Assembly (NCBI RefSeq): GCF_037042905.1
Contig: NC_087247.1
Span: 5,394,001-5,458,000 of the forward strand
Direction of reading: 5' to 3'
Length of the DNA stretch: 64,000 nt
Origin: Lytechinus pictus
Lineage: Eukaryota
Shown: positions 5,583 through 62,300 of the stretch, in pieces
Numbering within the stretch: the first letter of the stretch is position 1
Layout of the letters: each line of letters starts with the position of its first letter
The notes under the pieces: model-generated
Database searches by the model: none
The model's input: the letters and a program-made list of their open reading frames with translations, nothing else
What the model was told of the DNA's origin: nothing
Made by a program: the position numbers and the translations under genes

Positions 5583-8500
5583 TCAAGCGAAAGCGCCCAG
5601 TGTCAGATCATCTGTAGAAAAAATAAGCGAAGTATAAGAAATACAGAAGTGATTAATTCGATAAGTAAGCATACCAATTCCACAAGCTACTTCGTTGAAA
5701 TGTTTTGGTTATTTTGGTAAAATCATCACGGAAAACTAAAGCATCAAACATCATTTCCTATTTAAACGTTAACTGCTTTATTTCAAATTAAGAGTGCACA
5801 TACATTTACTGTTCACCTTGGTTTAAAGCTCTCTTAACAAATGCCAGAAGCTTTACGCATTCGTGCATGATTGAAGTCACATCATATACATAATAATAAT
5901 ATATAGCATTTATGAGGCGCCGATTATCTAGTTGCCTATTCGAGAGCACGCTAGATATTACTCTGGCTATAGCTCCAGCTGCTCCAGGCGCTTGGTGCAT
6001 TCAAGGAATAAATCCTGCCGGGTACCCATTCACCTTAACTGGGTTGAGTGCAGCACAACGTGGGTAAATTTCTCGCTGAAGGAAAGCACGCCATGGCTAC
6101 GAATCGAACCCACGTCCATCTGATTGAAAGTCAAGAGTCCTCTTACAGCTCGTACATACAGCTCGTACATGCAATGAATGCCGACAGAATGTAGAGTGGC
6201 CCGTTCTCTTTTTTCTGATGGAGGCCTATACCCCCGTAGTTTTGTTAATTATTGGTGTTCCTTTCAGAATAGCAGGTCAGACTACTTAAGCATTTCCTTA
6301 CGCGACGCTCTTATGAAACATACGTTTGAGTGTACTACTCACCATTGTCGTACTGGGTGCATCGTCCGGCGGCGTCACGATGTATGCACCCAGAAGCCCT
6401 TTGCACACCGCTAGTACCATGGTGAATGCAACGTCCAGTAGCATCTAGCTGGGTACAGCCACCTGTTGGGGCATATTGGATACAACGTCCACTGGCATCC
6501 TGGGTGGTACATCCGACAGCCGGAACCTGTTGAACACAACGTCCGTTGGCATCGCGTTGGGTGCAACCACCAGTTGGTGTATGCTGGACACAACGTCCAC
6601 TGGCATCGCGTTGGGTACATCCACCTGTTGGAGCATTTTGAACACAACGTCCACTGGCATCGCGTTGGGTGCAACCACCAGTTGGGGCATGTTGGACACA
6701 ACGGCCACTAGCATCACGTCTAGGGCACGTTCCCCCATCGGTCGGGAACACGCCTGGGGCACGCGGATATGCAGGAGCAGCGGGTGCATATGGAGAGCCT
6801 TGATGATAAGAGTCATCTCCGTAACCTGGATAAGATGGAGCATAAGGTCCAGTCGGTGGAGCATATGGAGACTGTGGGGCATGAGGAGCGTGTGGGGTAT
6901 TTGGTACGTGAGGTGCCTGAGGGGCATTTGGAACATGTGGAGTATGTGGGGCATGCGGCATTTGTGGAGCATGAGGAACTTCCGGGGCATATGGGGTCTG
7001 TGGCAGTTGTGGCGCATGCGGAGTGCGTGGCACACTCGGGGCCTGTGGTGCATGTGGAATTTGGGGGACCCGTGGTGCATTTGGCATTTGGGGGACCCGT
7101 GGTGCATTTGGCATTTGGGGGACCCGTGGGACACTTGGGGCAGATGGTGTGTATGGTGGCAGTTGGGGTGGTGGGGCACGTGGTGAACTTGGAGCTGGTG
7201 GAGCTGGTGCTCGAGGAAAAAGGGGAGGAGCTAAAACGGGGCTCCTTGGGGCAGGTGCACGTGGGCGTGATGGAATTGCTGCTCCTGGAAAGACTGGGAC
7301 ACCCGCAGAAGTCCCTGGTATTACGACACCAGTTGACGTACCACTCCCTGTGCTCCCATCTGTTCCGCCAGTAGCATCAACACCTACTTCTGTGCCATAT
7401 TCTTCCTCACTGCTGTCTTCATCACTACCGTATTCGTATTCTCCATCTGCTGCGTTTTCATATTCCGTAGTGGTAACATCTACATCCGAGATAGGTGCAT
7501 TGGCGGGGGCAACAGGCTGAACAACAGAAACTCCATCCGTTCCATCTGTGCCATCAGTTCCGTCAGTAGTATCAACGCCGGTACCCTCATATTCGTACTC
7601 TTCGCTGCTGCCACTATCGCTGTAACCACCATTTGCAGAGTTACTCAGATCGTATTCAGTAACTGTTACCTCAACATCGGCGTTGACACCTGGTACAGGG
7701 GCATATGCAGGTCCTCCCGGGAGAGGAGCTCGTGGTGGCACAATGGGAGCTCTTGCCGGGGGTAGTGGAGCCTGTGGAAAAGGTGCACGTGGTACCACAG
7801 GAGGGCTTGGAGCGTATGGCTGTCTTGGCGAAAGTGGTACATTTGGAACTGGTGCTCTTGGTACTGCGGGAGCACTTGGATAATATGGCGCTCTTGGTAC
7901 AGGAGGACTCGGAGCACGAGGTACTTGGCGGAACGTTTTATCGCATGATCCTTTGTGTTGTACTGAGACTGAAACGCCCGATTTTACGGAATCGTCATCG
8001 AGATCACATTCATTGTGATACGTGTGTCCGTTTGAACCGCAGACCGCTCCAGATCTGCTGTCACATGAGTCCCTTCGAGCTATGCAGAAAAACAAGACAA
8101 TATTTGATTTGCATATGAGGTACTTGTATGCGGTAATAATCTATTAAACTAAATATAACATGCCGCATACTGCTGTCCTTTGCTTTCTCCTACTATTGAT
8201 AATAGTTTCATATAATTTAATTCAATAACCTTTTGAAAGTCCTTCTGGACAAAAGTCCTCATTTAAACGTAATCTTATTTTGTAAACATTCTATAAATAT
8301 TGTAGTTGATAATCATTTCCTTGCTCCTATTCCGTACAGCTCGTTCTATACTTTGTATCAAGATGATATCCTTCGGGTATGAAGGTGTGCTGAAGCTTTA
8401 GACATGTTAAATTTAAACGTGTAATTTGATTGTAATTGTTTTATTCTGATGTTTACTATTTGTAAACTGATGAATCACGCATGAAGTAAATAGATTAATA

Positions 8501-8889
8501 GATTGATGAAAACAAATTAAATAATAATTGATTGTAATACAAAAACAAATTACACCAAGTAGGGTATTAAACCTTTATGCTTATTCGGTGGTGATTTTGT
8601 CCGTTTTATTAAAATCCAATATAAACACCTTTCAGGCTAGGAAATTGACCAAAATATAAGGTTTTCTTCTTTAAGGTCTCTGATACACAATGACTACATT
8701 CTTTATTTGATATATTACAAATCCAGTTCATGCATACGTATTGTGTATAACCACCCCAGTTTTGAATAGGCATACTTCTAAAGGCCTCAGAAGTCAAATA
8801 TTTTCAATTTAAATCAACTTACTTCTTGGCATTGCCTGGGTTAGGAGAGCTAGTGACAGGAGACATATTGCTGACTTTATCAGCTTCAT
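5583..8889 (-). CDS. g1: secreted Pro/Ala-rich acidic matrix protein with N-terminal 4-Cys Kazal-like domain and 7 C-terminal C-x8-C repeats (~610 aa)
   Basis: Exons 8889-8823 (MKLIKSAICLLSLALLTQAMPR, signal peptide, donor GTAAGT), 8079-6343 (TRRDSCDSRSGAVCGSNGHTYHNECDL...HKGSC; PRAP blocks; SSEEYEY; acceptor ctgcatag, donor GTGAGT) and 5611-5583 (DDLTLGAFA*, acceptor tttctacag). All phase 1 and in frame. Confidence 0.88.
5890..6140 (-). mobile_element. tRNA-derived SINE in g1 last intron
   Basis: B-box GGTTCGATTC on the minus strand; core GTGCTGCACTCAACCCAG..GGTGAATGGGTACCCGGCAGGA shared with copies at 27215 and 58795; (TAT)n tail. Confidence 0.75.
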
Positions 8890-13001: not shown

Positions 13002-15099
13002 CTATCGTTTTCCAGACACTCCTCCGGAACATGCTTGACCAGAAGGATCATGGTTGCAACTTCCTCCACTGGGGGCATATACAGGACCTCCTCCTGGTGC
13101 TCCTGGTCCTGCTGGTCCTCCTGGGGCATAAGGGCGAGCTGGAGCGTGTGGTGCTGGAATCCTTTGCCCAGGTGCATTAGGTCTAGGTGCTCTTGGTCCA
13201 GGTAGGGGAGCACGTGGCCCTCCTGCAGGTGCTCGGGGCCGAGTTGATGGAGCACGCGGTCCTCCAATGGGTACACTGGGCCTGGGTACAGGAGCTTGGG
13301 ATCCAGGTGCAGGAGCAAATGGTCCTACAGGTCCCCGTGGAGCAGATGGACGCGGGCCCGGGGCATATGGACGGCCGGATACACGCGGTCCGGTTGGTGC
13401 ACGGGGCCCGCCCGGAGCTCTTGGACTGCCTGGAGCACGTGGACTACCTGGGACACGTGGACTACCTGGAGCACGAGGCGAACCAGGGCGAGGAGCACGT
13501 GAACCTCCACGACTACCACCAATCCCATCAGCTCCGACAGCCCCATCAGTCCCGCCATCTCCACCAGCCCCATCAGCTCCACCAGTACCGTCTCCAGCAT
13601 CAGCACCATCAACACCATCTGCGCCATCAATATCACCAGAACCGTAGTTATAGTACTCTTCACCACTACCACTGCTTTCGTCACTGCCGCTTGAACCTTC
13701 ACCTTCGTAATCTCCGTAGTCAGCATCAACTTCACCATCGTAATCACCAACGTCTCCTCCATCTCCACCATCCCCACCGTCACTTGGGGAAACGGGTGCA
13801 AATCTTGTTTCGGGAACTACTGGTGCGGCTGGTGCAGCGGGGACAGGTGCAGCCGGTCTTGGTGCAACTGGGGCATATGCAGGAGCTCTCGGAGGCTGTG
13901 GTCTTGGTGCAGCGGGTACGTATGTTGGAGCACGGGGCATCGGTGGAGCAGGAGCCCGAGGAGCTTGGGCATCTGACTGCTGATCTGAACTTCCACCAGC
14001 ATCGTTCCCGTCTTGAGTAAATGGACCACTACCTCCAGGGGGTCCCGGTGCGAATCCAGGCATACCTGGAGCATGTGGGGCATGGCTCGGAGGAAATGGA
14101 GCATTTGGATAGTATTGTGGGGAATTTGGCTGGTATCCTGGAGCAAATGGCACACCTGGTGCATGTGCTGGGGCAGATGGTGCATGAGGTTGTTGGGGTG
14201 GTGGGGCGTTAGGAGCTGACGGATAAGGGCCTGGAGCAGGAGCTCTAGGCGGTTGATAGCCTGGGTGTCCTGGAGTGGGAGCTCTAGGTGGTTGATTTCC
14301 TGGATAGCCTGGTGCAGGAGCTCTAGCTGGAGGATAGCCTGGTGCGTGTCCCGGTGCTGGAGCACTAGCAGGAGCCCCTCCTCCCCATGATTGGCGGTCA
14401 GCACCACAAGCGGCACCGGGTTTCCCCAGGTCGCACGAATCTCTTGGAACTGAAAGAAAACGGGCAATCAAATGAAGATAGTAAAGTAGATGTGGCCGGC
14501 TACATTCTAGACGCGTAAGCTTTTTATGGCACAACGAGAAATCAATTTGTTTTATGCTCTTTATTTGTATTCATTCCAACTTGTAAAATCATATTCACAT
14601 CGACTAAGAAAAATAAGTTACACTTGCAGATAAAAATACATATGTACAAAGCAGAGGCTGGACCTGGTTTAGGTGCAGCACTATTATGGATATATTTTTT
14701 TTTTCTGAAGGGACTATTGTCATGTCTTGGATAAGAATAAATAACCCTTCGAGTGAAAAGTGAGAGTCAAAACCACAAGACCATTTCGCTCTCACACCAT
14801 CATATTGAAAATGAATAATTTATATATACCGTATACCACAACTAAAAAAGCTATCAATTATTGATATTGGTTACATATCAATAATATAATAATAATTATA
14901 AAGTACGTTATAAAAGCATTTTGTCGCAAATAACTAAAATGAATTACCAACTTGGATTTAAAAAATTGCAAGGAACTATCATAAAAGTGTAAATCATATG
15001 ACTAATGCAATGAAACTCACATCTAGGAGACGCCAAAGAGGAAACACTCAGCGATAAAATACATGACAATATAGCGACAGTCGCCCTCTGCGTCCTCAT
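13002..15099 (-). CDS. g2: secreted Pro/Ala/Gly-rich acidic matrix protein with truncated Kazal remnant (~508 aa)
   Basis: Exons 15099-15021 (MRTQRATVAILSCILSLSVSSLASPR, donor GTGAGT) and 14449-13002 (FPRDSCDLGKPGAACGADRQSW...; acidic DYGDYEGEGSSGSDESSGSGEEYY; ends SCNHDPSGQACSGGVSGKR*; acceptor ttctttcag). Confidence 0.88.
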
Positions 15100-21886: not shown

Positions 21887-24219
21887 CTAGTCATCTAAAA
21901 TAAAGGGGGAGAGAAAATAAAACAAATCAGAAATCAAGCACGAGCGTGCATCAAGCATTAAATATGAAATAATATATTTTTAATTAAATGATGAGACAGA
22001 TTTTCGTCTTACAAGGTAATTTTTTTTCGTTCTTTTTGATGTATTTCTTTACTTTTAATCTAGATTTTCAAACTGACAAAAATTCCTCGAAAGTTAAAAA
22101 ATTATATATTCCCCTTCGACGATTAATAGTAGACAGTGATTAATTGATTGAAATGGTTATACGGGATCATACCTTCATATCTAGCTTTTCATGACAGTGC
22201 ATTGTCGGACATTGTGAGGGCAAGATGAGATTTATATATTAGTTTTGATAGATGCCAATATATTATCATGATTGCATTGATTCATAATGTTGTATTTGTT
22301 TACAATAGTGTTTCTAATAGGCTAAGAAAAATCACCTTCACTTGAATTGTTAGGATCGTTCGCACCACCATCGGTGCAAATGAAATCAGAAACACCATCA
22401 TTACAAGTGCCAGTGCCTGCATCTCCACCTGGGACATTTGCGGTTCCACCATCGGCTCCAGCGGGGACGAAACCAGGAGTTCCAGCGGGTGAAAATCCAG
22501 GAACTATTCCAGGTGCTCCTCCAGGTGCTCCACCAGGTGCTCCGCCAGGTGCTCTTGGCAAAGCACGACCCACACTAGGGACATATGGTCGACTTGGAGC
22601 ATTGGCACGGCGGCGACCACCAGGGGCAGAATATCCAGGACTAGGAGCGAATGATCCAGAGGAAGGAGCAGCTGCAGGGTGTGGAGCACGAGGTAGGGAT
22701 GGGGCACGGGGAAGTGCACGTGGTCTGCCTGGAGCACGTGCAACTCCTACACTTCCACGTGAAGATGGAACACCAGATGTCGTGCCAGGAACACCAGCAA
22801 CTGTCGCAGTTCCGGTCCCAGCATTCCCATCTGCGCCGTCAGCGCCATCAAAACCATCGGCACCGTCAACTCCTTCTGTACCATCAGCACCCTCTGCACC
22901 ATCATATCCTTCGTAATCGTAAGCCTCTTCACTACTGCCACTGCCATCTCCGCCGCCACTTCCGCTTCCTGCACCAGCACCTGCACCGTCACCTGCGCCG
23001 GCTCCTCCTGCTCCAGAATCACCATCAAAATCACCACCAGCATCTGCGGCGAAGCCGGCGAAGCCACCACTACCCACTACTCCTGGAGCATAACCAACGC
23101 CTGGGATTGGAGCATTAGGTGCAAATGCAGGACCAGAAGGAGCGGGTGCAGCAGCAGGTCTTGGTGCGGCTGGTCTCGGTGCAGCGGGTCTTGGTGCCGA
23201 AGGTGTAGGAGCACGGGCAGGGGGAGCACGGGCTGGAGGTGCACGGGCCGGTGGGGCAGCAGGCGATGGAGCATATCCGGGAGCTGAAGGAGCTGCAGGT
23301 GCAGGCGCATACTGAGGTGTTGAGTCATGTGATCCCGAAGTTCCTCCACCTTGATCATATTGCGGACCAGATGGCGCTGCATATCCAGGTTGATATCCGG
23401 GTGCCACAGGGGCATGTGCAGGTGGGGCTGGGGCTGCAGGGCGTGGGACTGGAGCTGCAGGGCGTGGAACAGGGGCAGATGGACGTGGAGCAGGAGCTGG
23501 AGCCCTTGGATGTGGATGAACAGGCGCATTTGGAGCTGCAGCTGGACCATGACCTCCAACTCCGCCTGCTCCCCCAGATCCACCTGGAGCATAGGGGGCT
23601 GATTGTGTCCCCCCTGATGACGATCGGCAAGATCCGTAGTGAGAAACCGATACGTCTTGTCCAGTCCTAGATGCTTCTTTTTCCATCTCGCATTCGTTAT
23701 TGTATGATTTTCCATTGGAGCCACAGACGTTTCTTGTGTCACTCTCGTCACAAGAATCCCTTGGAACTACATAAAACACAAGACATAAATACGGCATCTT
23801 AGAAATTATATACAAAACAGCCACCATACACAAGAAGTTTATGATAAACAATTCAAACTTACGCTTTCCTTAAAACATCATTTTTGGAGCCCACTCTACA
23901 TTTATGCCCCACTTGACAAGCAAATCGCACATAATACCGTAATCCAACATTTATTATTTATTTTACACAATATAGTATTACTGATTACAGAAAAAATATA
24001 AACTTATCATCTTATGAAAAAATACGATTACATGAGACGTTTGCAATAATTTTGTCGACCTGGCTATTCTCTAAAATACATTTATATCTCTATCATAAAT
24101 GGCAATTTAAATCAAAGGCGATGTATGATATATATATACTCACTTCTGGGTGCACCAATTGAAACGGCAATAAGAGAGAATAGGAGGGCCAGGATAACTT
24201 GATGTTTTATAATTTCCAT
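21887..24219 (-). CDS. g3: secreted Pro/Ala/Gly-rich acidic matrix protein with N-terminal 4-Cys Kazal-like domain (~504 aa)
   Basis: Exons 24219-24144 (MEIIKHQVILALLFSLIAVSIGAPR, donor GTGAGT), 23766-22336 (IPRDSCDESDTRNVCGSNGKSYNNECEM...HYGSC; SSEEAYDY; donor GTGATT) and 21894-21887 (DD*, strong pyrimidine-tract acceptor). If the last intron is retained the protein ends GDFS* at 22322. Confidence 0.87.
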
Positions 24220-32200: not shown

Positions 32201-32403
32201 TTAGATAGATGAGACCCAAATCCAAGATTACATGTGAAAAAACTACCCACATGTTGCATATTTTTTAATTCCCAGGGCTTTTTCAAAGTGTAAACCTTTT
32301 TTTGATACGCACTGTATATACATATATACTTACATCTTGGTGCCGCAAATGACGCAGATATCATCAACATTAATATGGCCACACTCCTCAACACGTCCAT
32401 CAT
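29271..32403 (-). CDS. g4: secreted Pro/Ala/Gly-rich acidic matrix protein with N-terminal 4-Cys Kazal-like domain (~395 aa)
   Basis: Exons 32403-32334 (MMDVLRSVAILMLMISASFAAPR, donor GTAAGT), 30683-29574 (SPRDSCDRGASGPVCGTNGKIYNDLCDL...YEYC; SDSSEESYDY; donor GTAAGT) and 29278-29271 (DD*). Confidence 0.88.
30952..32314. mobile_element. Tc1/mariner-like non-autonomous element in g4 intron
   Basis: TA|CAGTGCGTATCAAAAA..GTTTACACTT ... AAGTGTAAAC..TTTTTGATACGCACTG|TA; no transposase ORF. Confidence 0.85.
31060..31436. mobile_element. Kolobok-like MITE nested in the Tc1-like element
   Basis: TTAA|AGTGATTGGTTAAC ... GTTAAACAATACCT|TTAA. Confidence 0.7.
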
Positions 32404-35796: not shown

Positions 35797-38700
35797 CTAA
35801 CAGGGTCCGTTTCTAATCTGTTTAAGACGATGATCCTTCCTTACACACGCCGAATGTCGTAGATCACATGAACTTCTGTAAGTTTGTCCGTCAGTCCCAC
35901 ACACTTGCATCGGTTGAGCGATGAAAAGACGAGGACAAATCTCACAAGGCTCGTCAGCAAATCCTGCAAATCAAAAGAAAATAAATCACCTATTTAGGTA
36001 GCATATTTTGGAGTTTCGCACGATGCACGGCTGATTCAAGAAGACAATAAAGGTATTGAAAGTGCCCGTCAAATGACAATGCACAGTTGAAAGGTCATTT
36101 TCGAAAATTCTTAAAACCAGAACCGCAGCTCGTCCTTAGTTTTGGAGCTGACTAACAATTGCAAACATGTTGTTTGTCGTTTGTCAGAGTCCATGCAGTA
36201 CAAAATTCCTGTTTTGATTTACAAATTTTCGACTTTACGGTTGCTCATTGTCATGGAGGACATTTGAAAATATAGTTCTATGTTCGTAAAAGCGTCACGC
36301 GTGGTGCGTAACTACCTGTTATTAGAATAGCTTAAGGGTGTAGGTGATGATAAATGTGTTTCTGCATACAACGATTGACGATCTTAGATTTTTAGAACTA
36401 CAAAGTGCTTTTAAGAAACCGTATTAATTATTTATTTTGTTCTAGACAACGATTAAATCATTTACAAACATATTCACAATTCGCTAATGAATTCACCCTT
36501 TTACAGATATTGGGCGATACGAAAGAGGAAACACGAGAGTGTCAAATTAACACTATTTTGACTAATGAAAACTAGGCGTGTAGGGATGTTTCGAAAATAA
36601 TAATGTATAATTACCTAAACTGATTTACCATTATCATTAGTTGGAGCGTCGCATCCGTTACTTGTCCCTCCATTTTCTCCATTTTCCCCGCATTCCTTAT
36701 CTCTACTTGGTGTCTCAGGTTCCGGAGCTGGCGCTTTCGGTGATGGCTTCGGAGCAGGAGGAGGTGGAGGAGGAGGGATCGGTGCTTTTGGTTTGGGCGC
36801 TTTTGGGACGACAGGTGGAGGAGCCGGCCTTCGTGGAGGAGCGGATGGAGCCGCTGGACGGCGAGCGGGAGAGCGGGGAGCTGGGGGAGGAGCTCTAGGA
36901 ATAGTGTTGGAGATTCGATGACGTGGAGATGGGGCTGCGACATGGGGTCTAACTGGAGCTGCAGCAGGTGTATTTCTCCCAGGGGATAGATGAATGTCTA
37001 CCTCTCCTTCGGTTACCTCTCCGCCGTGTCCTCCCTCTGATGGTTCGACATCTCCTGGTGAAGAGATGTCACACTCCTCGCTGCTGTCGCTTCCACAACC
37101 TACACAATTGCAAAATTTATATAATTATGAAATTTCAGGGATCCCAAAAAAGTATTTCTGAATCCCCTGAAATACCATTAAAAGTAGGTAATTATCGAAT
37201 TACAATATTCAGGGCATAACGCACCGCGATAGTCATCATAATTATAATCATAATCAGACTTATACTTAACATCTATTGTATAATGATATTATTTCATTCT
37301 TGTGAGGACGACAAGAGCAGTCTTGCCGAAGTGTCCAGTTTGGGTGGTCTTTTTCACTAGCAGCATATGCCCACGAAAGAATACATGATGTACCGTGAAA
37401 CCACTATCATTTTAATTGTCCAATTCTATCAAGTCTGTCGAGTGCCTCTTAGAAAGAATAAAAACTACTTACATGTATATATACCTGTCTAAATTTAGTT
37501 CTTTACAGCAACAACAGCCCTTATTCTAATAGTATTAGTGAACGGGAGTAACGTTTGTCGAGCAAATCACAACAACTCTATACGACGACAAATGAAAACT
37601 TGAGACGGCAGAATATAATTGTATTATTATCTGTTTTGTCATAATGTTGTGTTAAGGAGTTATTTTCGCACGAGGGGTAATAATAGAAATTGCATCCCTC
37701 TTGTCGTACAACTTCAACTAACCTGCTCCTCCTATGCTTCCTCCATCAAATCCTCCGTCAGTTGCGTCATTAGTGCCATCTACCCCATCTACAGCATCAT
37801 GAGCTCCAGCTGAGGGGACGAGGGCCGGTTGGTCTCTAGCTGGAGGAGCCCGGGCAGGAGCGCCCATGACAGGTGCTTTTGTGAAGAAAATGCATATTTG
37901 GCAACAATGAATACGAAGAATATTATCATGACTATTGGAATGCAGAGACATGAAAATGATATCAGATTTATATCAATCTGTAATGTTTGTAAAGGATTCA
38001 GTCATGTTTATGGGCAAACAGGGACGTAAATCAATGTTTCGGATGGGGGGGGGGGGAGTTTATTTATGTCACAAATTCTGTTCTAATACAGAAATTGACA
38101 ATTTAGCATCAAACCGTACAAAGCATTTCATGGGCCCATTTCGTCTGGGGACAATAGTGACTCTAATATGCTTGTGCCTGGGCCCATACATGTCTGTCGT
38201 TGTTGGTGCTGGATACGCTAGTGATGATGCACATGACACGAGAGAATATTCACAGCTACTAAAGCCTTCTGATTACCATGATTATCATAATATCGGAAAT
38301 TTGGAATGACAAACCTTTGGGTGCCCGGGCCGGGGATCGGGGCCTTGGGGCACGCGGAGGTGCTGGAGCAAGTGGTGTTCTAGGGTTTGGCATAGGTGCT
38401 CGTGGGGCTGGGATCGGTGGAGGAGGAGGAGCTCGAGGTGGAGTACCATGCGCAGGAGCTGTAGGGGTACAGGGAGCAGGGTCTCCTCCGCATTGCCCAT
38501 TGGAGCCACACGATCCTCCATTGTCGTCTCGTTTAACTGTTTACAAAAAATAAAATGATGACACTGTCGATCGTTTCATTTGTAATATCAAGTAAGCATG
38601 ACTTTCTGCACTCTAGAGAGGTAACTTGCTACACTCTAAAAAAAATATTGGGTAAAAATATTCCATGAGGATCATGTGTCCAAACAACATTGGGCATTTC

Positions 38701-39387
38701 TTTTGGGCATTTTCATTATCCAGTGTGATGAAAATTTTGCCCATTCTAAAGTAATTGCTGCTTATTTTTAACCTTACTGGACAATCAAGATGCTTCCCGC
38801 ATTGGGTAAAATACTGCCCCAAATTAGTTGGAACATAATTACCCTCGTGCTGGTTAAAATTGTACCCAATATGTTTTTACAGTGTATGAAGCCGGGGCGT
38901 TGTGAGAATTTCACACATTTTGTAATCAATTGTAAATCGATTTCGGTCCAAGAAGCAATCATAAGTCTTGCAAGAAAATTCAAATAATTCCGTATTAATC
39001 ATTTTCTAGCTCCATAACAAAATCTATAACTGGCAATGGTCCATCGTTTTCTACTGTTAAAATTTACACTTTATTCTTCTAGCAACATCTACAATGTGCA
39101 TAGAGGGGCATCGTTACCCCCTTTTCATAGGAGATGGCATTTTAAACTGGTTAAATTGGAGAATCTAATCACAGATTATGTGATAAGCAAGTAAAAGCCA
39201 TTCCATCAGTTAATGTGCAACTTACAGTGGATTTTCTTTTACTAGCTAGTATTAAATACTGCAAGAAAACTAAGCACGCGGAAAAAATACTGTGAATGAT
39301 ATTGGTTACAATACCTTTTGTTTCAGCCGATATCATCGATGAGAGCATGATTACAGTAAGAACAGTCCACATGTTACGGATACACAT
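35797..39387 (-). CDS. g5: secreted Pro/Ala-rich protein with C-terminal 6-Cys Kazal domain (~361 aa)
   Basis: Exons 39387-39315 (MCIRNMWTVLTVIMLSSMISAETK), 38536-38315 (VKRDDNGGSCGSNGQCGGDPAPC...), 37875-37723, 37099-36629 (GCGSDSSEEC...GGTSNGCD) and 35963-35797 (GFADEPCEICPRLFIAQPMQVCGTDGQTYRSSCDLRHSACVRKDHRLKQIRNGPC*). All GT-AG, phase 1. Mostly missed by the ORF track. Confidence 0.85.
38632..38884. mobile_element. CACT-ended MITE in g5 intron
   Basis: TA|CACTCTAAAAAAAATATTGGGTA ... TACCCAATATGTTTTTACAGTG|TA. Confidence 0.7.
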
Positions 39388-41562: not shown

Positions 41563-41720
41563 ACATTTTCATAATTTCATAACGTTGAGATCATGGCCTC
41601 CTTCCATACAGGATGTATACTGGAGATCGCACAGAGTGGTATACGTTCTTCCATCTGACCCGCAGACTTCACTACCCCTTGAGACCCCTTGAGATCTCAA
41701 CCGGACACGGGATACAGATG
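41563..41720 (-). pseudogene. Decayed Kazal-coding segment of g6
   Basis: 10-bp tandem duplication ACCCCTTGAG (41674-41693) shifts the frame. The out-of-frame remainder reads SEVCGSDGRTYTTLCDLQYTSCMEGGHDLNVMKL*KC, with TGA at 41569-41571 where paralogues have the Gly of the terminal G-x-C. Confidence 0.85.
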
Positions 41721-44333
41721 TCAGCATCCTTCGTATCGCACCCTTCCTCACACACTTCTTCAACATGTTCACCATCAGTGGGGTTTCCACCATCCCCGTC
41801 ACCACCACCATTACTACCATCTTCGTCACCATCACCTTCCCCACCACCACCACCACCACCACCATTACCCCCAGCCACACCCTTCCCGCCACCACCACCA
41901 CCACTTTGTTCTGTGGAGCTACCAGTAGGAGAATTGGAAGAGTAGACAACAACTGGAACCAACTTAGGCATGTTAGGGATGAGGTGAACAATGGTTTGAT
42001 GGAAACCTGATGATACTTTCTTATCGCCTCCTTCTTTTCGAGTGCTGCCTCCTGTATCACCCGCATCCTCACCTGCGTACAGGGAGAACAAGGTCGTGAG
42101 ATACGGGCGTTTTAATCACAGGAGGCAGTACCATCCATGAACACACATCAAGACCACAACAATAACAACAACAAACATTTTATTTGGACAACCGAGACAG
42201 GATACAATCTAAAACGGAATCGAATTAACTAATTCGTGTTATATGTTTTATTATTCACGTATAAATTTCAAAACAAAAAAAATCTATAATAAATAAGTAC
42301 AAACAAAATAAATAGTAAACAAAAGTACAAGATGTAGATCAAATGGAATGAACTTAATAAATATCAATTCTCAAGCTATTTATATCACCCAAGTCATTGG
42401 ATTCTATTCCTAGAAGAAATGTGAGTAACGGTTCGAGAGGAACATATAGTAACAATTACTACGGTATAAAATGGAAATGACATTTAAAATATTATTCTTG
42501 ATGTGACATAACTAGACCTGATAATTTCAGCTAAAGTTTTGTCGAAAACCTATAAGAGGACTACCGCTACGTTCAATTTCAAAGAAGGAGAAAGGGAACA
42601 AACAAACAAAAATCCTTAGCCCACTCAAACATACAAGCAAAGTAACATACAAAAGATCAACGAAATATACTCATTGCTCAACCATTTGGGCCACCAATAT
42701 CAATGCAATCAAAATCTATAGCTAGCAATGACTGTCATGGGGAATGAAGATTACCGCGCACCTGACGTGCCCCCAGCATCTCCACCACCATCACCGCCTT
42801 CGCAACCACCTTCACCACAACCACCGTCACCCCCTTCACCACCGCATCCTTCGCCTCCTCCTTCACCTCCCTCGCATCCCTCCCCGCCACCGGATTCGCC
42901 ATCTGTACTCTCTTCACTGCTGGAGCTGCTGCTGCTACCTTCACCACCACTGACACCACCATCGGCACCACCACTGGCACCCTCTCCAGCATCACAACCA
43001 CCACCACCACTGGCGTCTCCACCCTCACATCCTCCGTCACCGCCGCCATCACCGCCGCCGTCACCACCACCACCATCGCCTCCACCGCAGCCGCCTTTTC
43101 CGCATCCGCCATCTCCGCCACCGTCTCCGCCATCTCCGCCACCGTCTCCGCCACCATCGCCTCCACCGCAGCCGCCTTTTCCGCATCCGCCACCGTCACC
43201 ACCTCCATCACCGCAACCATCGGCTCCTGCATCGCAAGTGCCTCCTCCTCCACCTCCCCCTCCTGATGGAATAATAACCAACGTAATAAATAACAAGAAC
43301 GTGGGGGGGGGGCTTGATATCGAGAATTGATGTATATGGGAACCGAAATAGTCATTTCCAATTCATACGTCCTTTTTTCAAATGTTTTAATATAACTTTC
43401 ATGAATTTAGAAATTTTACAAATTTGCTTGGAATGGTAGCGGTTCTTTGTTTTGCTTTATTAGCTATTAAGAGTAATCCGTAAGCATAATGCTGTGCGTG
43501 AATACAGGGGCGGATCCAGGATTTTCCAAAGGGGGAGGGGGCAAATTTTGCGGAGGAAAATTTTGACAAGCCAAAAAAAAAAAGGTTTTCAACCATGAAT
43601 TAAAGACATTTCGTGCCCGAAAAAAGTTGACAAGCAAAAAAAAAGGTCTTTAATTTTAAAGGGGGGGGGGGGACATTTCGGTTTCAATTGTATTTTTACA
43701 TTACAAATTTTAATTTCTCTTCTCAAAGGGGGGCACGTGCCCTATGTGCCCCCCTCTGGATCTGCGCCTGCGTGAATATAAATTTGTCATTTTCGTGTCA
43801 TCTAATGGAACAAACTGTTGGGCATTTAATAGTCGTTCAAATGTCTTTAATATCAAGAAGCATACATTTTCTTAACAACTTTCTCACATAATTATGTTCT
43901 CAATGTTAGGGACACTGCTAAAAACTTACAAAGCCCGAAATATTGTTTTTCTTTTATCACTAATCAATATTTTTGAAAGTCTGGAGGATTATGCTCATTC
44001 AAATATTTAATTGTTAGAAAGAGGATTTCGGAAAAAAATAAAAACAGACATTGACTGTCGGCTTGTTTATAGATCCAATATAATCTGTCAAATATTATTT
44101 GCATTTTACAAATTCTAAATCTACAAGAAATTCCATAGCAAGGCAAAAGTGAACATGCTGGAAATAAAAAGAAAATGATTCATCATTTTGACATCAAACA
44201 TAATGAGTGGTAGCTGAAATATATATATGTATATAAAACAAAAAATCTTACGCTTTTCTCTTGGAGCTCCTTCAGTTACCCTACACAAGAGGAAGAAACA
44301 GACAAGGAGTGCCAATCCGGTGACAGTCTTCAT
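41672..44333 (-). CDS. g6: secreted Gly/Asp/Cys-rich acidic protein, Kazal domain truncated by frameshift (~327 aa; may be a pseudogene)
   Basis: Exons 44333-44252 (MKTVTGLALLVCFFLLCRVTEGAPREK), 43262-42762 (RGGGGGGGTCDAGADGC...SSSSSSSEES..., donor GTGCGC) and 42072-41672 (ends DICIPCPVEISRGLKG*). Confidence 0.75.
43505..43770. mobile_element. CAGGGGCGGATCC-type short element in g6 intron
   Basis: CAGGGGCGGATCCAG ... CTGGATCTGCGCCTG with 8-bp TSD CGTGAATA (43497-43504, 43771-43778). Confidence 0.8.
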
Positions 44334-52993: not shown

Positions 52994-55707
52994 TTAGCAG
53001 GCTCCATCCTTTGCCTTCGAAAGCAGGAGATCACCACGGATACAAGCAGAGTATCGGAGGTCACATGCACTTCTGTATGTCTGTCCGTCTGTACCGCACA
53101 CCCCCATGCTATGTCCCACGAAATGGTTTGGACAGGGAACGCAGTGGTTTCTCAGGTCCTCTAAATGCAGAAGGAAGTCATATGATAGGGTCAGGTATAA
53201 TTTTCTTGATTAGATAATAATATTGGAGAAATTAAAAGAATGTATTGAATTTTAAAGGATTTTCATCAAGATTATTAGTTGATATGTTTTTATTATACGT
53301 ACCACTAATTTGATGCTTATTGACATATTACATATGTTACGCCTTGACCTTACAAGATGAGGTAACATATTCAATTTTGTCTTTCAATTGATTTATTACA
53401 TTTTTTTATATACCTTCATTTCAAATCACCGTGTCACCATAATACTCCTAAAGAGATGTACTTTTCTGAAATTATTTGAAATAATATAAGTGAAGTGAAA
53501 ACAAATCAATGGTTCCAGGGAGATGTCTCTCTTTTATGCTTATTTCATATCCATTCAATATCGAAGCAAATCGTTGCAAAATGTGTTGCATTGATTTATA
53601 ATACTGCACCGCCTATAGCTATCCCCGAAGTATTTTTTTCTAAACGCAGCTAAATGGGTAATACAATTATTATTGCAGCATTGCTACAAACAATGCCACC
53701 CTACCTTTTCGCAAAAGAAGCATCAGGATTGATGTTCCTCAAGAGAGGTTCACATTTCCCCCTCAAAAACCAAAATAGCATAAGCGGGAGATTTTGTTTT
53801 ATGTGACGTGTATCGATGAAGACGGCCATTGAATGTGACTACATTTAAACAAAAAAATGTCCCACCGTAATCACCATTGGTATCACAACCATTACTGGTG
53901 CCGCCATCTCCATTATCACCACATCCGTTGTCGCCATTGTCTCCATCACTGGGGCTTTCGGGTTCAGGTGCAGATGGAGCCTTTGGAGCGGGAGCTGGTG
54001 CAGGAGGAGCAGGGGGAGCAGGAGCAGGTGGAGCTCTCGGTGCTGGAGCTGGTGCAGGTGCTGGAGCTCTTGGTGCCGGGGCAGGAACTCTTGGTGCCGG
54101 GGCTGGAGCTCTTGGTGCCGGGGCTGGAGCTCTTGGTGCCGGGGCTCTATAAACAGGCGCCCTAGGAGCCTGAGCTGGGGCTCTATAAACAGGCGCCCTA
54201 GGAGCTGATGGTGCAGCGGCGGGTGCATATGCAGGAGCACGGGGAGATGGAGCACGCGCTGGTGCACTAGGGGCTGGTGCCCTTGCAGGAGCTCTGGGGG
54301 CTGGTGCTTGTGCAGGTGCTCGTGGACGTGGAGCGGCAGCAGGGTAACCAGAAGGAGCAGCAGCAGGTGCTCCAGCTCCTCCGCCTCCGGCTCCTCCACT
54401 AAAGCCTCCACCATCGCCGCCGCCAGCACCTCCTCCCCCACCACCACTTGAACCACTTCCGGCACCGTATTCATATCCTCCACACTCTTCACTACTGTCA
54501 CCACCACAACCGCCTGTAAACATTGAGACATTTATATATTATGTATTTTAGCAATAAAGATATACTCTACCACTATAGATAGCATTAACATTTATTGATA
54601 CTGGTATTTTCGTTACATTTTCTGAATGAGATGTTTTCATTGTCTCTTTAGTCTTACATAATTTTTAATTCCGAAGGAATATAGGCCTACATTTAGTTTC
54701 TTTTTTCAATGTGACTTAAACTAACAGATCTGGGGCAGTAACTTCAACCTTCTTCATTTCCAATAGCATCATATATCAAAATTACCCATCGGATGATAAT
54801 TTATTATAAGCTGATATATTCAAATCGGAGTAAAACCATTAAAGAAAACTTTTCCCGGGATAACAATGATATAATTAGGCCTATATATTGCTCGAATAAT
54901 GAAAGTATATTTATTTTACCTCCGAATCCATCTTCGCTGCTGCCTCCACCGTAGTCGTATTCATAACCGTAATCGTATCCCTCGGCTCCATCTCCTCCCT
55001 CTGCTTCACCGTACGCTGCATAATAACCTGGCCCTGATGGAGCAAATGCGGGAGCAGAAGGAGCTCTTGCGGGTGCTCTCATCGGAGCCCTAGGTGATGG
55101 AGCGGCTGGGATCGGTGCCCGAGGTGCTGGGGCTGGAGCACGTGCTCGTGGGGCTGGAGCTCGTGGGGGAGGAGGAGGTGGAGGCGGAGCTCGGGGAGCA
55201 GGCACTGGGGCTGGGGCTGGTGCAGGAGCAGCCGGTGCACATGCCCTGGGATCTGCTGAGCAGGGATCCGTGGAGCCACAGTCAGATCCGCCGTTGTCAC
55301 ATCCATTTCCGTTATCATCACGTTTCTCTGCAAACATTCAGTGCAAAATGAAGGAAATCTGATTTTTGTTTCAATGTACAATTTTCTCTTTAGAGACGGG
55401 TATATTTTTTAATCAATGGCATATTAACCATCTGTAATAGAAATTATATGACAACATTAAATGTAACGTCTCCATTTTACTAATCTCTGTGACAACTGTC
55501 TGCCAATTCACCCCCCCCCAAAAAAAAAAAGGAACAATATCACATTTCATGTTTTTAAATGCCAAGTCAATATGATCAAATCAAATCAAGCCTTGCTTTC
55601 TTTGGGTGGTGTGAACACTTCTTACCTCGCGGCGCTGCGACAGAGGGGTCGACCGTCAATGCCAGCAAAACTAGCAACACTAGGGTTTTCACCAAATCCA
55701 TCTTCAT
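52994..55707 (-). CDS. g7: secreted Pro/Ala/Arg-rich protein with C-terminal 6-Cys Kazal domain (~434 aa)
   Basis: Exons 55707-55626 (MKMDLVKTLVLLVLLALTVDPSVAAPR), 55327-54920 (EKRDDNGNGCD...), 54513-53866 (GGCGGDSSEEC...APAPRAP repeats...GGTSNGCD) and 53160-52994 (EDLRNHCVPCPNHFVGHSMGVCGTDGQTYRSACDLRYSACIRGDLLLSKAKDGAC*). All phase 1. Confidence 0.88.
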
Positions 55708-56173: not shown

Positions 56174-56183
56174 GTATTTATAA
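56174..56183 (-). promoter_or_regulatory. Putative TATA box of g7
   Basis: TTATAAATAC on the minus strand about 125 nt upstream of donor GTAAGT at 56050. Confidence 0.55.
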
Positions 56184-57890: not shown

Positions 57891-57896
57891 TGAAAT

Positions 57897-58048
57897 NNNN
57901 NNNNNNNNNNNNNNNNNNNNNNNNNNNNNNNNNNNNNNNNNNNNNNNNNNNNNNNNNNNNNNNNNNNNNNNNNNNNNNNNNNNNNNNNNNNNNNNNNNNN
58001 NNNNNNNNNNNNNNNNNNNNNNNNNNNNNNNNNNNNNNNNNNNNNNNN
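57897..58048. other. Assembly gap
   Basis: Run of N. Confidence 0.99.
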
Positions 58049-59338: not shown

Positions 59339-62300
59339 TTAGCAGCGCCCTATCTTGGTCATCGTGAGCTTCTTGTTGGCTTTGGAACAGGCTTCGTAGC
59401 TTAGGTGACATGGACTTTCATAGGTCTTTCCGTTAGAACCACATACCTTGTACTGCTTTACCATATTTGCTGGGCATTTAGTACATCCATGTCTGGTGGA
59501 ACCTGCATTGATGCACAAATAATTTCTGCACAATTTACAAGAATTTCTGCTATGGAATAGTAAGGTATTGGTTTCGTATATGTTCGTTCATAAAATGTTC
59601 GTTCGAGAATAGCAAAGGCACCACTTAAAACCAGGATGTAAGTTTTGTTTCATTTTGTTTTATTTTTTAAACCTTATTGTAAGTGCTTTAGTCATGATTT
59701 CGATGCCATTATTTTGTTTCAAACATTTCATTTTCAGCATCAGTTGAATTGGATGAATTTCAACAGCCTGTTTGTAATATTCCCTGTCCTGTGAGAGCTT
59801 TGATTCAACTATCCACAGTTGACGCTGGTTTAAAACCAAATGATAAGCGATATATTAATCAAATAGTAAGATAGTTTTGTCATGAAAATGTAAACTTGTG
59901 ATACAATCCTCACATATTCCTTACCACCGTTTCCTCCACCGCCGATCCCGCCGCCATTACCGCCAGCTCCAGTTCTCTCTTCGATACCACCAGCTCCATT
60001 CCCTCCAGCGTCACATAATTCACCACCAGCCAGGTTGCAACCGCCATCTCCTCCATTCCCTCCTCCTCCTCCATCACCACCATCGCATCCCTCGCCTCCG
60101 TTGCCATCGCAACCACCATCTCCGCCATCACCACCACCATCTCCGCCATCACCATTATCTCCGCCATCACCTCCATCACCACCATCACCTCCATCACCAC
60201 CGTCACCTCCATCACCGTCTCCGCCACTCTGCCCACCGACCCACCTAGGAATGTAGATTGGGATGAACTGAGGGCGAGAAGGAGGGAATACATTGTTGTA
60301 GCTTCCACCTGGGGGGTCTGCACTGCTTTCTTCATATCCATCGCCGCCATCACCGCCACCGTCTCCACCACCGTCTCCGCCACCATCTCCACCGCCATCA
60401 CCTCCGTCACCTCCATCCCCACCATCACATTCTTCTTCACTGCTGCTGCTACTGCTTCCTCCTCCTCCTGTGCATCCACCTCCACCGTCAGCAGCTAATG
60501 CACATCAAAGGTAAATAAGAAATGTGAGGCCGTATTGTCGATGCAATGCACGCACTTCCTATGTTATAGTTATAGTTAGTATATGGCTTTTTCAACAAAG
60601 TAAAATTATATAATTATATAAAATAACATAGTCCAGACCATGTTTGTCACTTCAGATAAGTATAACAGGAGTAAATCATTATTCAACCACAGATTATTTA
60701 ATTTTTTTTCAAATCGTAAAAATGGGGATGTAGAACAAAAACACAGAAAGAGTAAAAAGTACATCAAAAAGAGAGGTATGGGAGATGCAACTAATTATTT
60801 CCCATATTATTTGACTGAGAGAAAAAGTAACTTCACACCTAGATCGTCTTGCCCCCCTTCCTATCAACATATCCCCGCAATCATGACAAAAGCGACAAAG
60901 AAAAAAGTCAAACTTACCCGAAGCTCCACCAGCATCGCCACCATCACCTCCGTCACACCCGCCATCACCTCCACATCCGCCATCTCCACCACCGTCACCA
61001 CCTCCACAATCTCCGCCACAATCTCCACCGCCGTCACCACCATTTCCACCACAGTCGCCGCCACAGTCGCCGCCACCATCCCCTCCGCAATCGCCACCGC
61101 CACAGTCGCCTCCACCGTCTCCGCCATCTCCACCATCACAGTTGTTACCGCTGCAATCTCCTCCGTCTCCTCCATCGCCCCCGTCGCCGCCATCACAACC
61201 TCCGTCTCCACCGTCACACCCTCCATCACATCCACCATCGCCGCCATCACCACCATCGCATCCACCTCCGTCACCGCCTTCAGCATCGCCTTCCTCTTCA
61301 CTGCTGCTGCTGCTGCTCCCGCCTCCACTTCCACCAGCAGATGCACCACCATCACCGCCATCACCACCGTCTCCGCCACCATCGCCGCCTCCATCGCCAC
61401 CACCGTCACCACCTCCTCCATCTCCTCCACCACCATCTCCTCCACCACCACCATCTCCTCCACCACCACCATCTCCTCCGCCTCCATCACCACCGCCACC
61501 ACCACCACCGCCACCACCGCCGTTTCCATCATTACCGCCACCGCAGTCACCACCTCCACCGTCGCAGCCACCATTGCCGCCTCCATCACCACCACCTCCA
61601 TCACCTCCACCATCGCCGCCGCCATCTCCACCGTCACCGCCATCACCTCCGTCACATCCATCCCCGTTACCACCATCGCATCCATCTCCACCACCGTCTC
61701 CTCCGCCATCCCCTCCATCACAACCGTCTCCATTACCCCCATCACAAGAATCTCCGTCTCCTGTAAATAAAAGTACATAATTATTATAATGATGACAATG
61801 ATGATGATGTTGATGATGATAATAATGATAATTATAAAAATAATGATAATAAACATGATAAATGTAATAATAATAACAATAATGATAATAGTACGTTTTA
61901 TTTTAATGTTACCCGTTTACATCAAAATTTTGTTCAAATCTGTCATACTTTGAGGAGCCCATAATATACAAGCTTTGCTTTCTATAGATCCCACTATAGT
62001 TGGATCCTCAATTTTCGCAACTTATAAATCATATTATCCTTTGTATTTTATCATCATAATGTGTCTATTTTAAGTTGATTTGATGACCTTGGAATACTAT
62101 TTATGACATTGACTTGTTGCGATTATATTAACTTGGCTTATATTTGTTCAAATTGAAATAAATGAAATGAAATGAAATAATAATAATGATAGTATCTTAT
62201 TCTTGAAATATTGCTTATTGAAGCTTTATCCCCAACTATAAAAGACTGGATGACTGACTATCATATTCAAATATAACTGTTTCCTGAATGGCGTTGAAAC

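What the first reader, a model, noticed from the sequence alone, without database searches (positions are those of the whole stretch)
7380..61330. Casein-like SSEE/SSSEE phosphorylation clusters in all eight proteins
Seen: g1 SGSSEEYEY and DSSEEEY; g2 SSGSDESSGSGEEYY; g3 SGSSEEAYDY; g4 SDSSEESYDY; g5 SDSSEEC; g6 SSSSSSSEES; g7 SSED and DSSEEC; g8 SSSSSSEEE twice. Knowledge: S-x-E/pS is the FAM20C secretory-kinase consensus, and pS-pS-pS-E-E is the casein calcium-binding centre. This is the clearest motif surviving inside otherwise unalignable blocks. Adjacent Tyr in acidic context are candidate sulfation sites (inference).
Basis: partly seen in the sequence, partly recalled or inferred. Interest (0 to 1): 0.7.

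Follow-up and report, generated by a model that had tools for sequence, protein, structure and literature searches.

The report
Conserved phospho-serine motif in urchin tooth proteins
Eight neighbouring sea-urchin genes for secreted tooth and skeleton matrix proteins all keep a short Ser-Ser-Glu-Glu patch that fits the target site of the secretory kinase Fam20C, which adds a modest detail to a protein family first described in 2008.

Summary
All eleven quoted strings are at exact coordinates in eight complete minus-strand gene models. Both assembly gaps lie at least 1.29 kb from any coding exon.

Strict SSEE occurs in 7 of 8 proteins. Gene g2 has SGEE here, while its S. purpuratus orthologue has SSEE. 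Composition-preserving shuffles give 0.02-0.32 proteins with SSEE and never more than 3.

The genes are not new. They are orthologues, in the same order, of the S. purpuratus tooth-matrix "Ala/Pro-rich + acidic Gly-rich + Kazal" proteins Glean3:17587-17590 (Mann 2008). The core [DG]-S-S-E-E, usually followed by acidic Tyr, is kept in the S. purpuratus orthologues and in two more paralogues left of the window. Its third codon positions vary freely.

Published tooth phosphoproteomics (Mann 2010) places a phosphate on the S-x-E serine of a second D-S-S-E site (DS*SEK) in one family member. It also finds Fam20C in the same matrix. This genome encodes Fam20C and TPST orthologues.

Phosphorylation of the SSEE core itself is still untested, because the core lies in blocks that trypsin does not cut. 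The strict casein centre (three or more Ser, then EE) fits only g6 and g8.

First readers of the scan noted this cluster (s1-320000) and similar acidic Kazal genes elsewhere in the genome (s1-317584, s1-320106).

The parts
6335..8889 (-). g1 CDS (exons 8889-8823 and 8079-6335). Layout: signal peptide, N-terminal Kazal, AP-rich and acidic blocks, seven C-x8-C repeats. Orthologue of S. purpuratus Glean3:17589.
   Evidence: Pfam Kazal_2 E 1.7e-09; MS/MS peptides TYHNECDVEDDSSR and SGVSISVNHK of 17589 match it
7589..7615 (-). g1 motif SGSSEEYEY
7397..7417 (-). g1 second motif DSSEEEY
13002..15099 (-). g2 CDS (exons 15099-15021 and 14449-13002). Orthologue of the last segment of the fused model Glean3:17588.
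13650..13694 (-). g2 degenerate motif SSGSDESSGSGEEYY. It has no strict SSEE; the S. purpuratus orthologue has SSGSSEEYYDY.
22322..24219 (-). g3 CDS (exons 24219-24144 and 23766-22322)
   Evidence: Pfam Kazal_2 E 3.2e-09
22913..22942 (-). g3 motif SGSSEEAYDY (S. purpuratus: SDSSEEAYDY)
29554..32403 (-). g4 CDS (exons 32403-32334 and 30683-29554)
   Evidence: Pfam Kazal_2 E 4.4e-05
29986..30015 (-). g4 motif SDSSEESYDY (S. purpuratus: SESSEEGYDY)
35797..39372 (-). g5 CDS, five exons (39372-39315, 38536-38315, 37875-37723, 37099-36629, 35963-35797). The last exon is a classical Kazal domain.
   Evidence: Pfam Kazal_2 E 9.3e-11
37071..37091 (-). g5 motif SDSSEEC, starting three codons after an intron (S. 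purpuratus: identical GCGSDSSEEC)
41672..44333 (-). g6 CDS, three exons (44333-44252, 43262-42762, 42072-41672). It is Gly/Asp/Cys-rich. The C-terminal Kazal is interrupted by a 10-bp tandem duplication.
42907..42936 (-). g6 motif SSSSSSSEES (full casein-type run)
52994..55707 (-). g7 CDS, four exons (55707-55626, 55327-54920, 54513-53866, 53160-52994). The last exon is a Kazal domain. Orthologue of Glean3:17587.
54930..54941 (-). g7 motif SSED
54482..54499 (-). g7 motif DSSEEC, just after an intron (S. purpuratus: CGDSSEECGGY)
59339..62718 (-). g8 CDS, four exons (62718-62625, 61760-60918, 60494-59925, 59502-59339). It is Gly/Asp/Cys-rich with a C-terminal Kazal. Probable orthologue of the tooth phosphoprotein Glean3:10589.
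61291..61317 (-). g8 motif SSSSSSEEE (exon 2)
60430..60456 (-). g8 motif SSSSSSEEE (exon 3)
33955..34101 (.). Assembly gap, intergenic between the g5 stop and the g4 start. It is not part of any CDS.
57897..58048 (.). Assembly gap, intergenic between the g8 stop and the g7 start. It is not part of any CDS.

Best explanation
The window holds eight members of an echinoid tandem family with at least eleven genes. The family encodes secreted, largely disordered biomineral matrix proteins, known from S. purpuratus tooth matrix as the "Ala/Pro-rich + acidic Gly-rich + Kazal" proteins.

Each protein carries one or two copies of a short linear motif under purifying selection. The core is [D/G]-S-S-E-E. 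In the type with an N-terminal Kazal domain the motif extends to S-[D/G]-S-S-E-E-x-Y-[D/E]-Y. In g6 and g8 it extends to S6-7-E-E.

Proposed mechanism (inferred). During passage through the Golgi, the Fam20C orthologue phosphorylates both Ser of S-S-E-E, since each is an S-x-E site. It then phosphorylates the primed Ser upstream (S-x-pS). This would give about 3 phosphates per site, or 6-7 in g6 and g8. TPST may add sulfate to the flanking acidic Tyr.

The result would be a small centre of very high negative charge inside an Asp/Gly-rich block, bracketed by basic Pro/Ala/Arg spacers. That centre would bind Ca2+, amorphous calcium carbonate or calcite surfaces at the matrix-mineral interface.

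Shown here or in print: the motif, its conservation, the secretory route, both enzymes in the genome, the family and Fam20C in tooth matrix, and phosphate on the S-x-E serine of another DSSE site in a family member.

Inferred: phosphorylation of the SSEE core, Tyr sulfation, and the mineral-binding role.
For: - Motif coordinates and complete gene models.
- SSEE in 7 of 8 proteins, against 0.32 or fewer expected from local-composition shuffles.
- The motif aligns in one column across six N-terminal-Kazal paralogues whose flanks barely align.
- Across the 13 copies of the core examined (eleven in the window, two left of it), third codon positions vary freely (AGC/AGT, GAA/GAG). Only two amino-acid changes occur, while the neighbouring positions are highly variable.
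- S. purpuratus orthologues keep the core in g2-g5 and g7, and in 17590/22278.
- Two further paralogues left of the window carry DSDSSEEGYGYEYY.
- Signal-peptide exons all end in a ..PR / phase-1 junction.
- The Fam20C orthologue on contig C10 has a C-terminus identical to the S. purpuratus tooth-matrix Fam20C peptide and is closest to zebrafish and human FAM20C structures.
- The TPST orthologue matches human TPST1 at E 1.4e-95.
- PMC2830187: DS(ph)SEK with probability 0.896 in Glean3:22278, GVAGGS(ph)EDVGK in 17588, and Fam20C in the same matrix.
- PMC7719703: fam20C is a direct Alx1 target in sea-urchin skeletogenic cells.
- 37 of 143 Tyr lie within 12 residues of the motif, a zone covering 7.5% of total length.
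Against: - No phosphopeptide covering an SSEE core has been reported. The acidic blocks lack Lys and Arg, so tryptic proteomics could not see one.
- Two RNA-seq runs of this species showed no reads over g1. Expression here is therefore unproven, although the tissue of those runs is unknown.
- Outside the core, S-x-E sites are only modestly enriched (2-5 observed against 0.6-2.6 expected). These are not heavily phosphorylatable proteins like phosvitin or phosphophoryn.
- g2 has lost the strict motif in this species.
- The reading frame of the g6 and g8 Gly-rich exons rests on splice-phase logic and on the S. purpuratus protein evidence, not on RNA from this species.
- Orthologues are about as similar overall as in the motif, so conservation between the two species alone is weak evidence. 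The paralogue comparison carries the argument.
Confidence: 0.6

Rival explanations
1. The conserved Ser/Glu/Tyr patch works without phosphorylation. It could be a plain acidic Ca2+- or mineral-binding patch, a protein-protein contact, or a target of some kinase other than Fam20C.
For: The motif sits inside blocks that are already strongly acidic, with 13-16% Asp in places. No phosphopeptide of the core exists. S-to-G in g2 and E-to-D in g7 are tolerated.
Against: If only charge mattered, Ser would drift to Asp or Glu. Yet Ser-Ser is kept in 12 of the 13 copies, with AGY codons whose third positions vary. A sister DSSE site is demonstrably phosphorylated on the S-x-E serine.
Confidence: 0.15
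2. The motif has no function of its own. It is a relic of the ancestral acidic block, kept by recent duplication, gene conversion or a low-complexity codon repeat, such as the (AGC)n run in g6 and g8.
For: The genes are tandem paralogues and therefore not independent. The Ser runs of g6 and g8 are AGC/AGT microsatellite-like. Low-complexity acidic sequence gives SSEE by chance in 1-11% of local shuffles.
Against: Flanks have diverged until they are almost unalignable, while the 4-residue core persists in 9 of the 11 cluster genes seen; g2 (SGEE) and g9 (SSSSSES) are the exceptions. The same core persists in S. purpuratus. Free synonymous variation at third positions argues against recent conversion.
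Confidence: 0.13
3. The Ser-Gly plus acidic context marks a glycosaminoglycan attachment (xylosylation) site, which would make these proteins part-time proteoglycans.
For: g1 (DSGSSEE), g3 (GSGSSEE) and g2 (SSGSGEE) contain Ser-Gly next to acidic residues. This resembles the xylosyltransferase preference, which is recalled from general knowledge and was not tested here. The genome has three Fam20 loci, and one may be the xylose kinase Fam20B.
Against: Ser-Gly is not conserved. g4, g5, g7 and the two left-flank paralogues have S-D-S-S-E-E, and the S. purpuratus orthologue of g3 has SDSSEE. The invariant part is S-S-E-E.
Confidence: 0.06

Closest known systems
S. purpuratus tooth-matrix 'Ala/Pro-rich + acidic Gly-rich + Kazal' proteins, Glean3:17587, 17588, 17589, 17590/22278 (Mann et al. 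2008, PMC2614417; phosphoproteome 2010, PMC2830187)
   Same: [quoted passage not shown] The gene order is the same (17588 is a fusion of g6-g5-g4-g3-g2). N-termini and MS/MS peptides are near-identical. The DSSEE cores are the same.
   Different: This is another species, with separate and complete gene models. The family-wide DSSEE-Tyr core was not pointed out in those papers: no mention of phosphorylation, sulfation or tyrosine was found in the 2008 text. Here g5 and g7 have a C-terminal Kazal exon, whereas 17587 was reported as lacking Kazal. The published 'acidic Val-rich motif' of 17588 looks like a wrong-frame reading of the Gly/Asp exon.
Casein phosphate centres (pS-pS-pS-E-E) and other Fam20C substrates of vertebrate SCPP/SIBLING genes
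   Same: Both are secreted, disordered, tandemly duplicated mineral-handling proteins with Ser clusters followed by Glu-Glu that fit S-x-E/pS. Both combine Pro-rich and acidic composition. In both cases a Fam20C kinase is present in the mineralising tissue.
   Different: There is no sequence homology. All introns here are phase 1, whereas SCPP introns are phase 0 (recalled from memory, not tested). Only g6 and g8 have three or more consecutive Ser. The mineral is Mg-calcite rather than calcium phosphate. A Kazal domain is retained.
Phosphodontin (Glean3:18919), the major acidic sea-urchin tooth phosphoprotein
   Same: It comes from the same tissue and has Ser-Ser followed by acidic residues (E-I-S-S-G-E-G-E) that are phosphorylated in vivo.
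   Different: Phosphodontin has about 35 tandem repeats, each with a site, and has no Kazal or AP-rich blocks. The proteins here have only one or two sites each.

Membership tests
Echinoid tooth-matrix AP-rich / acidic Gly-rich / Kazal family (Mann 2008) | N-terminal secretory signal peptide | tested here: met
   Each of the eight genes has a first exon encoding an M..hydrophobic..(A/S/G)xx(A/S) stretch. In g1-g4, g6 and g7 it runs through ..PR to a phase-1 GT donor (in g6 via ..PREK); in g8 the exon continues past PR to ..LNMITK, and g5 has no PR and ends ..AETK. This was read by eye; no SignalP run was available.
Echinoid tooth-matrix AP-rich / acidic Gly-rich / Kazal family (Mann 2008) | Kazal-type domain | tested here: met
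   Pfam Kazal_2 scores above cut-off in g1, g3, g4 and g6 and in the C-terminal exons of g5, g7 and g8. g2 keeps only a remnant and has no Pfam hit.
Echinoid tooth-matrix AP-rich / acidic Gly-rich / Kazal family (Mann 2008) | [quoted passage not shown] | tested here: met
   Composition of the open frames and the assembled proteins.
Echinoid tooth-matrix AP-rich / acidic Gly-rich / Kazal family (Mann 2008) | Orthology and synteny with Glean3:17587-17590 | tested here: met
   The published sequences and peptides match g1-g7 segment by segment and in the same order. The 17590/22278 orthologues lie 39-56 kb to the left of the window.
Echinoid tooth-matrix AP-rich / acidic Gly-rich / Kazal family (Mann 2008) | Protein occluded in tooth or test mineral | not testable with these tools
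   This is known only for S. purpuratus. Two RNA runs of this species had no reads over g1.
Fam20C (Golgi casein kinase) substrates | S-x-E/pS consensus on a protein in the secretory pathway | tested here: met
   Both Ser of S-S-E-E are S-x-E sites and the upstream Ser is an S-x-pS site. All eight proteins have signal peptides.
Fam20C (Golgi casein kinase) substrates | The kinase is present in the organism and the tissue | tested here: met
   The genome has three Fam20 loci. The one on contig C10 ends in EAMQPYGSDLDDDDFDF, the tooth-matrix Fam20C peptide of S. purpuratus, and best matches FAM20C structures. Presence in the tissue is known from S. purpuratus only.
Fam20C (Golgi casein kinase) substrates | Phosphate found on the site in vivo | not testable with these tools
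   There is only indirect evidence: DS(ph)SEK in the 22278 orthologue and GS(ph)ED in 17588. The SSEE core has never been covered by a peptide.
Casein-type phosphate centre (pS-pS-pS-E-E) | Three or more consecutive Ser directly followed by Glu-Glu | tested here: inconclusive
   The feature is met in g6 (S7EE) and twice in g8 (S6EEE). It is not met in g1-g5 and g7, which have S-x-S-S-E-E.
Casein-type phosphate centre (pS-pS-pS-E-E) | Homology to vertebrate SCPP/casein genes | tested here: not met
   An exhaustive HMMER search of 1.84 billion representatives with g4 (exon 2) as the only query found only generic Kazal proteins, and Pfam found nothing but Kazal. The resemblance is functional, not familial.
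TPST tyrosine-sulfation sites | Tyr with Asp or Glu close by, on a secreted protein, with TPST present | tested here: inconclusive
   Acidic Tyr cluster beside the motif in g1-g4, g7 and the two left-flank paralogues (36 of 61 acidic-context Tyr). None occur beside the motif in g5, g6 or g8. A TPST orthologue is present. No sulfation data exist.

The most novel reading that the evidence does not exclude
The DSSEE-Tyr core could be the shared phospho/sulfo mineral-binding centre of an echinoid-specific gene family. That family would have grown by tandem duplication from a neighbouring multi-Kazal gene. In doing so it would replay, by convergence, the vertebrate path from SPARC (which contains a Kazal module) through SPARCL1 to the SCPP genes. 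The shared features would be the same kinase (Fam20C), the same S-x-E cluster logic, the same Pro-rich plus acidic disordered architecture, and the same clustered genomic layout, applied to calcite instead of apatite.
Probability: 0.25. Interest if true: 0.65.

Novelty: new member of a known kind. Interest (0 to 1): 0.4.

Why it matters
The protein family and its partial phosphorylation have been published for S. purpuratus, so the genes are ordinary orthologues.

What this work adds is a precise and testable target. One invariant five-residue core per acidic block is shared by at least nine of eleven paralogues and by two urchin species. It has been invisible to tryptic proteomics.

If the core is the Fam20C-made charge centre of these proteins, a single peptide assay or a Ser-to-Ala edit could test how sea-urchin teeth use phosphoproteins. 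It would also strengthen the case that Fam20C plus S-x-E clusters is a toolkit recruited independently for carbonate and phosphate skeletons.

The corrected gene models (Kazal exons in g5 and g7, and the Gly frame rather than the Val frame in g6) are useful for annotating both species.

Tried and rejected
- The search for homologous proteins with g1 returned only Corynebacterium Fe-S proteins, matched through Pro/Ala low complexity; these hits are spurious.
- The same tool restricted to the g4 Kazal region scored nothing. Its length filter and the make-up of its database make that blank uninformative.
- The exhaustive HMMER search with g4 gave only generic multi-Kazal proteins at 31-45% identity (33-37% among the best hits) and no orthologues. 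No third species could therefore be compared.
- Read laying on 5000-10000 found no reads over g1 in two RNA runs, X12 and X13. Only a repeat at 5890-6090 was covered. One run that is only guessed to be RNA (X9) has low-depth contigs at 6549-6886. This gives no verdict on expression, and the tissues are unknown.
- The Val/Ala/Glu-rich frame of the g6 exon, used by the S. purpuratus Glean model, was rejected. It needs a phase-0 donor inside the signal peptide and then runs out of frame with the exon that encodes the MS/MS-verified peptide.
- The plus-strand Pro/Ser-rich ORFs over g6 and g8 were rejected as mirror frames of the (GGN)n repeats.
- The GAG-attachment reading was considered and ranked low, because Ser-Gly is not conserved.

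Full report
**What is in the window**

The window is AT-rich DNA with GC-rich islands. Each island is a minus-strand gene.

I built eight complete models, each running from ATG to a single stop, with every intron GT..AG and phase 1.

- g1-g4 have two exons. The first encodes a signal peptide that runs through ..PR to the phase-1 donor. The second starts x-(P/R)-R-D-S-C-D and holds an N-terminal Kazal domain (Pfam Kazal_2; g2 keeps only a remnant). It continues with basic Pro/Ala/Arg blocks, an acidic Gly/Asp block, more Pro/Ala, and a Cys-containing tail.
- g5-g8 have three to five exons. After the signal peptide comes K-R-D-(D/G).. with Cys, then Pro/Ala-rich sequence (g5, g7) or Gly/Asp/Cys-rich sequence (g6, g8). 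The last exon encodes a classical six-Cys Kazal domain (Pfam above cut-off for g5, g7 and g8). In g6 this exon is broken.

**The assembly gaps**

- Gap 33955-34101 lies between the g5 stop (35797) and the g4 ATG (32403).
- Gap 57897-58048 lies between the g8 stop (59339) and the g7 ATG (55707).

The nearest coding base is 1291 bp away. No frame or exon depends on continuity across a gap. The fused S. purpuratus model runs g6-g5-g4-g3-g2, which supports the gene order across the first gap.

**The observation**

Strict SSEE occurs in seven of the eight proteins. g2 has SGEE and SDESS instead.

In shuffles that keep composition, the mean number of proteins with SSEE was:

| Shuffle scope | Mean proteins with SSEE |
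|---|---|
| Whole protein | 0.02 |
| 40-residue windows | 0.16 |
| 20-residue windows | 0.32 |

The maximum in 5000 shuffles was 3, against 7 observed.

The genes are paralogues, so this shows retention of a motif rather than independent origin. The more telling evidence is the following:

- In a MAFFT alignment of the six paralogues with N-terminal Kazal domains, the core falls in one column block, D-x-S-[D/G]-S-S-E-E-x-Y-x-Y. Its flanks are mostly gaps.
- Across the 13 copies examined (eleven in the window, two left of it), the four core codons are always AGY AGY GAR GAR. Third positions are mixed. Only two amino-acid changes occur: S to G in g2 and E to D in the first site of g7. The residues on either side vary widely.
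- Tyr is concentrated next to the core. Of 143 Tyr, 37 lie within 12 residues of it, a zone covering 7.5% of the sequence. Of 61 Tyr in acidic context, 36 lie there. This holds only in g1-g4, g7 and the two left-flank genes.

**Identity of the genes**

Earlier notes of the scan call this genome a sea urchin, Lytechinus pictus. I did not verify the species.

The literature search found Mann et al. 2008 (PMC2614417). [quoted passage not shown] Its Additional file 7 gives the sequences. They match this window as follows.

- Glean3:17588 is a fused model of the orthologues of g6, g5, g4, g3 and g2, in that order.
- Glean3:17587 is g7.
- The peptides of 17589 match g1.
- 17590/22278 correspond to two further genes 39-56 kb to the left of the window.
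- A ninth Gly-rich gene with SSSSSES, and a multi-Kazal gene, lie to the right.
- g8 probably corresponds to the Gly/Asp-rich tooth phosphoprotein Glean3:10589 (PIYIPVSVPR there, QFIPIYIPR here).

The S. purpuratus sequences keep the core:

| Gene | S. purpuratus orthologue |
|---|---|
| g5 | GCGSDSSEEC |
| g4 | DDSESSEEGYDYDG |
| g3 | GSDSSEEAYDYDG |
| g2 | SSGSSEEYYDY |
| g7 | CGDSSEECGGY |
| 17590/22278 | DDSDSSEEGYGYEYY |

So the refutation condition stated in the finding ("not conserved in orthologues") is not met.

**Is the motif modified?**

Mann et al. 2010 (PMC2830187) list 17588, 17590/22278 and 10589 among 15 tooth-matrix phosphoproteins. Their site table has three relevant entries:

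- In 22278 the phosphate in ..GPSDSSEK is placed on the first Ser of S-S-E with probability 0.896. That is the S-x-E position.
- In 17588 it is GVAGGS(ph)EDVGK.
- The Fam20C orthologue itself (Glean3:13763) is in the matrix, identified by its C-terminal peptide.

This genome has three Fam20 loci. The one on contig C10 ends with exactly that C-terminal peptide. Its closest solved structures are zebrafish and human FAM20C.

A TPST orthologue is also present, matching human TPST1 at E 1.4e-95.

A review reports that fam20C is a direct Alx1 target in sea-urchin skeletogenic cells.

Substrate consensus, secretory route, kinase, and a phosphorylated sister site are therefore all in place. What is missing is any peptide covering an SSEE core. 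The acidic blocks have no Lys or Arg, so tryptic analyses could not have seen one. The 2008 paper does not mention phosphorylation, sulfation or tyrosine.

**Limits**

- RNA evidence in this species is lacking. Two RNA-seq runs had no reads over g1. One run that is only guessed to be RNA has low-depth contigs inside the g1 exon. The S. purpuratus family was described as a set of tooth components not seen in earlier test and spine proteomes, so tissue restriction is a plausible reason.
- The large protein libraries gave nothing useful beyond generic Kazal matches. The comparison therefore rests on one other species.
- The Gly/Asp frame of the g6 and g8 exons is chosen for three reasons. It is the frame produced by the family's phase-1 donor and acceptor. 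It continues in frame into the exon carrying the homologue of the MS/MS peptide FVPVVVFPSK. And 10589 is described as Gly- and Asp-rich.
- The casein comparison is exact only for g6 and g8. The other genes have S-x-S-S-E-E. There is no homology to caseins or SCPP genes.

**Verdict**

The genes are orthologues of a known family. What is new is the recognition of a family-wide DSSEE-Tyr core, together with corrected gene models.

Noticed in passing
window 35797-35963 and 52994-53160 (minus strand): g5 and g7 each have a C-terminal exon encoding a classical six-Cys Kazal domain, joined by a phase-1 intron. The S. purpuratus orthologue of g7 (Glean3:17587) was published as the only family member without Kazal. 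Its model appears to read through the donor (..GDY|VTIFK).
   Followed up: yes
window 42762-43262 (minus strand): The 'acidic Val-rich motif' reported for S. purpuratus Glean3:17588 corresponds to the +1 frame of this Gly/Asp/Cys-rich exon. Its AAAAPAVRR would read SSSSSSSEE in the Gly frame if the Arg codons are AGR. The Gly frame is the one that fits the phase-1 splice sites on both sides.
   Followed up: partly
window about 41681-41700 (minus strand): A 10-bp tandem duplication (tctcaagggg twice) shifts the frame inside the g6 Kazal exon. The downstream frame also stops before the last Cys. This agrees with the scan's note s1-320109. It could be a real lesion, an allele or an assembly error.
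   Followed up: partly
G000:C3 5337700-5354900 (L014, L013, L007; 39-56 kb left of the window): Two further paralogues, orthologues of Glean3:17590/22278, sit here. Each has DSDSSEEGYGYEYY at the end of an exon. One keeps the experimentally phosphorylated DDSSEK site; the other has DDSKEK.
   Followed up: partly
G000:C3 5464030-5466032 (L006) and 5475362-5477593 (L010), right of the window: A ninth Gly/Ala/Pro-rich gene carries GGGSSSSSESGGG. About 10 kb further on is a multi-Kazal gene (Pfam Kazal_2 E 8e-18), which could be the parent of the cluster.
   Followed up: partly
window 5890-6090: A short repeat, probably a SINE, just 3' of g1 is covered at high depth by partly matching reads and contigs in all four runs laid. 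Nothing else in 5000-10000 is covered in the two RNA-seq runs.
   Followed up: no
window 6346-6736 (minus strand): The g1 tail has seven copies of an 18-residue C-x8-C repeat (GGCTQRDASGRCVQ..). g2-g4 have one copy each. This matches the scan's note s1-320110.
   Followed up: no
G000:C10 10692926-10719135 and G000:C2 12413484-12414065: These are the Fam20C orthologue, whose C-terminal 17 residues are identical to the S. purpuratus tooth-matrix phosphopeptide, and a single-exon TPST orthologue.
   Followed up: yes
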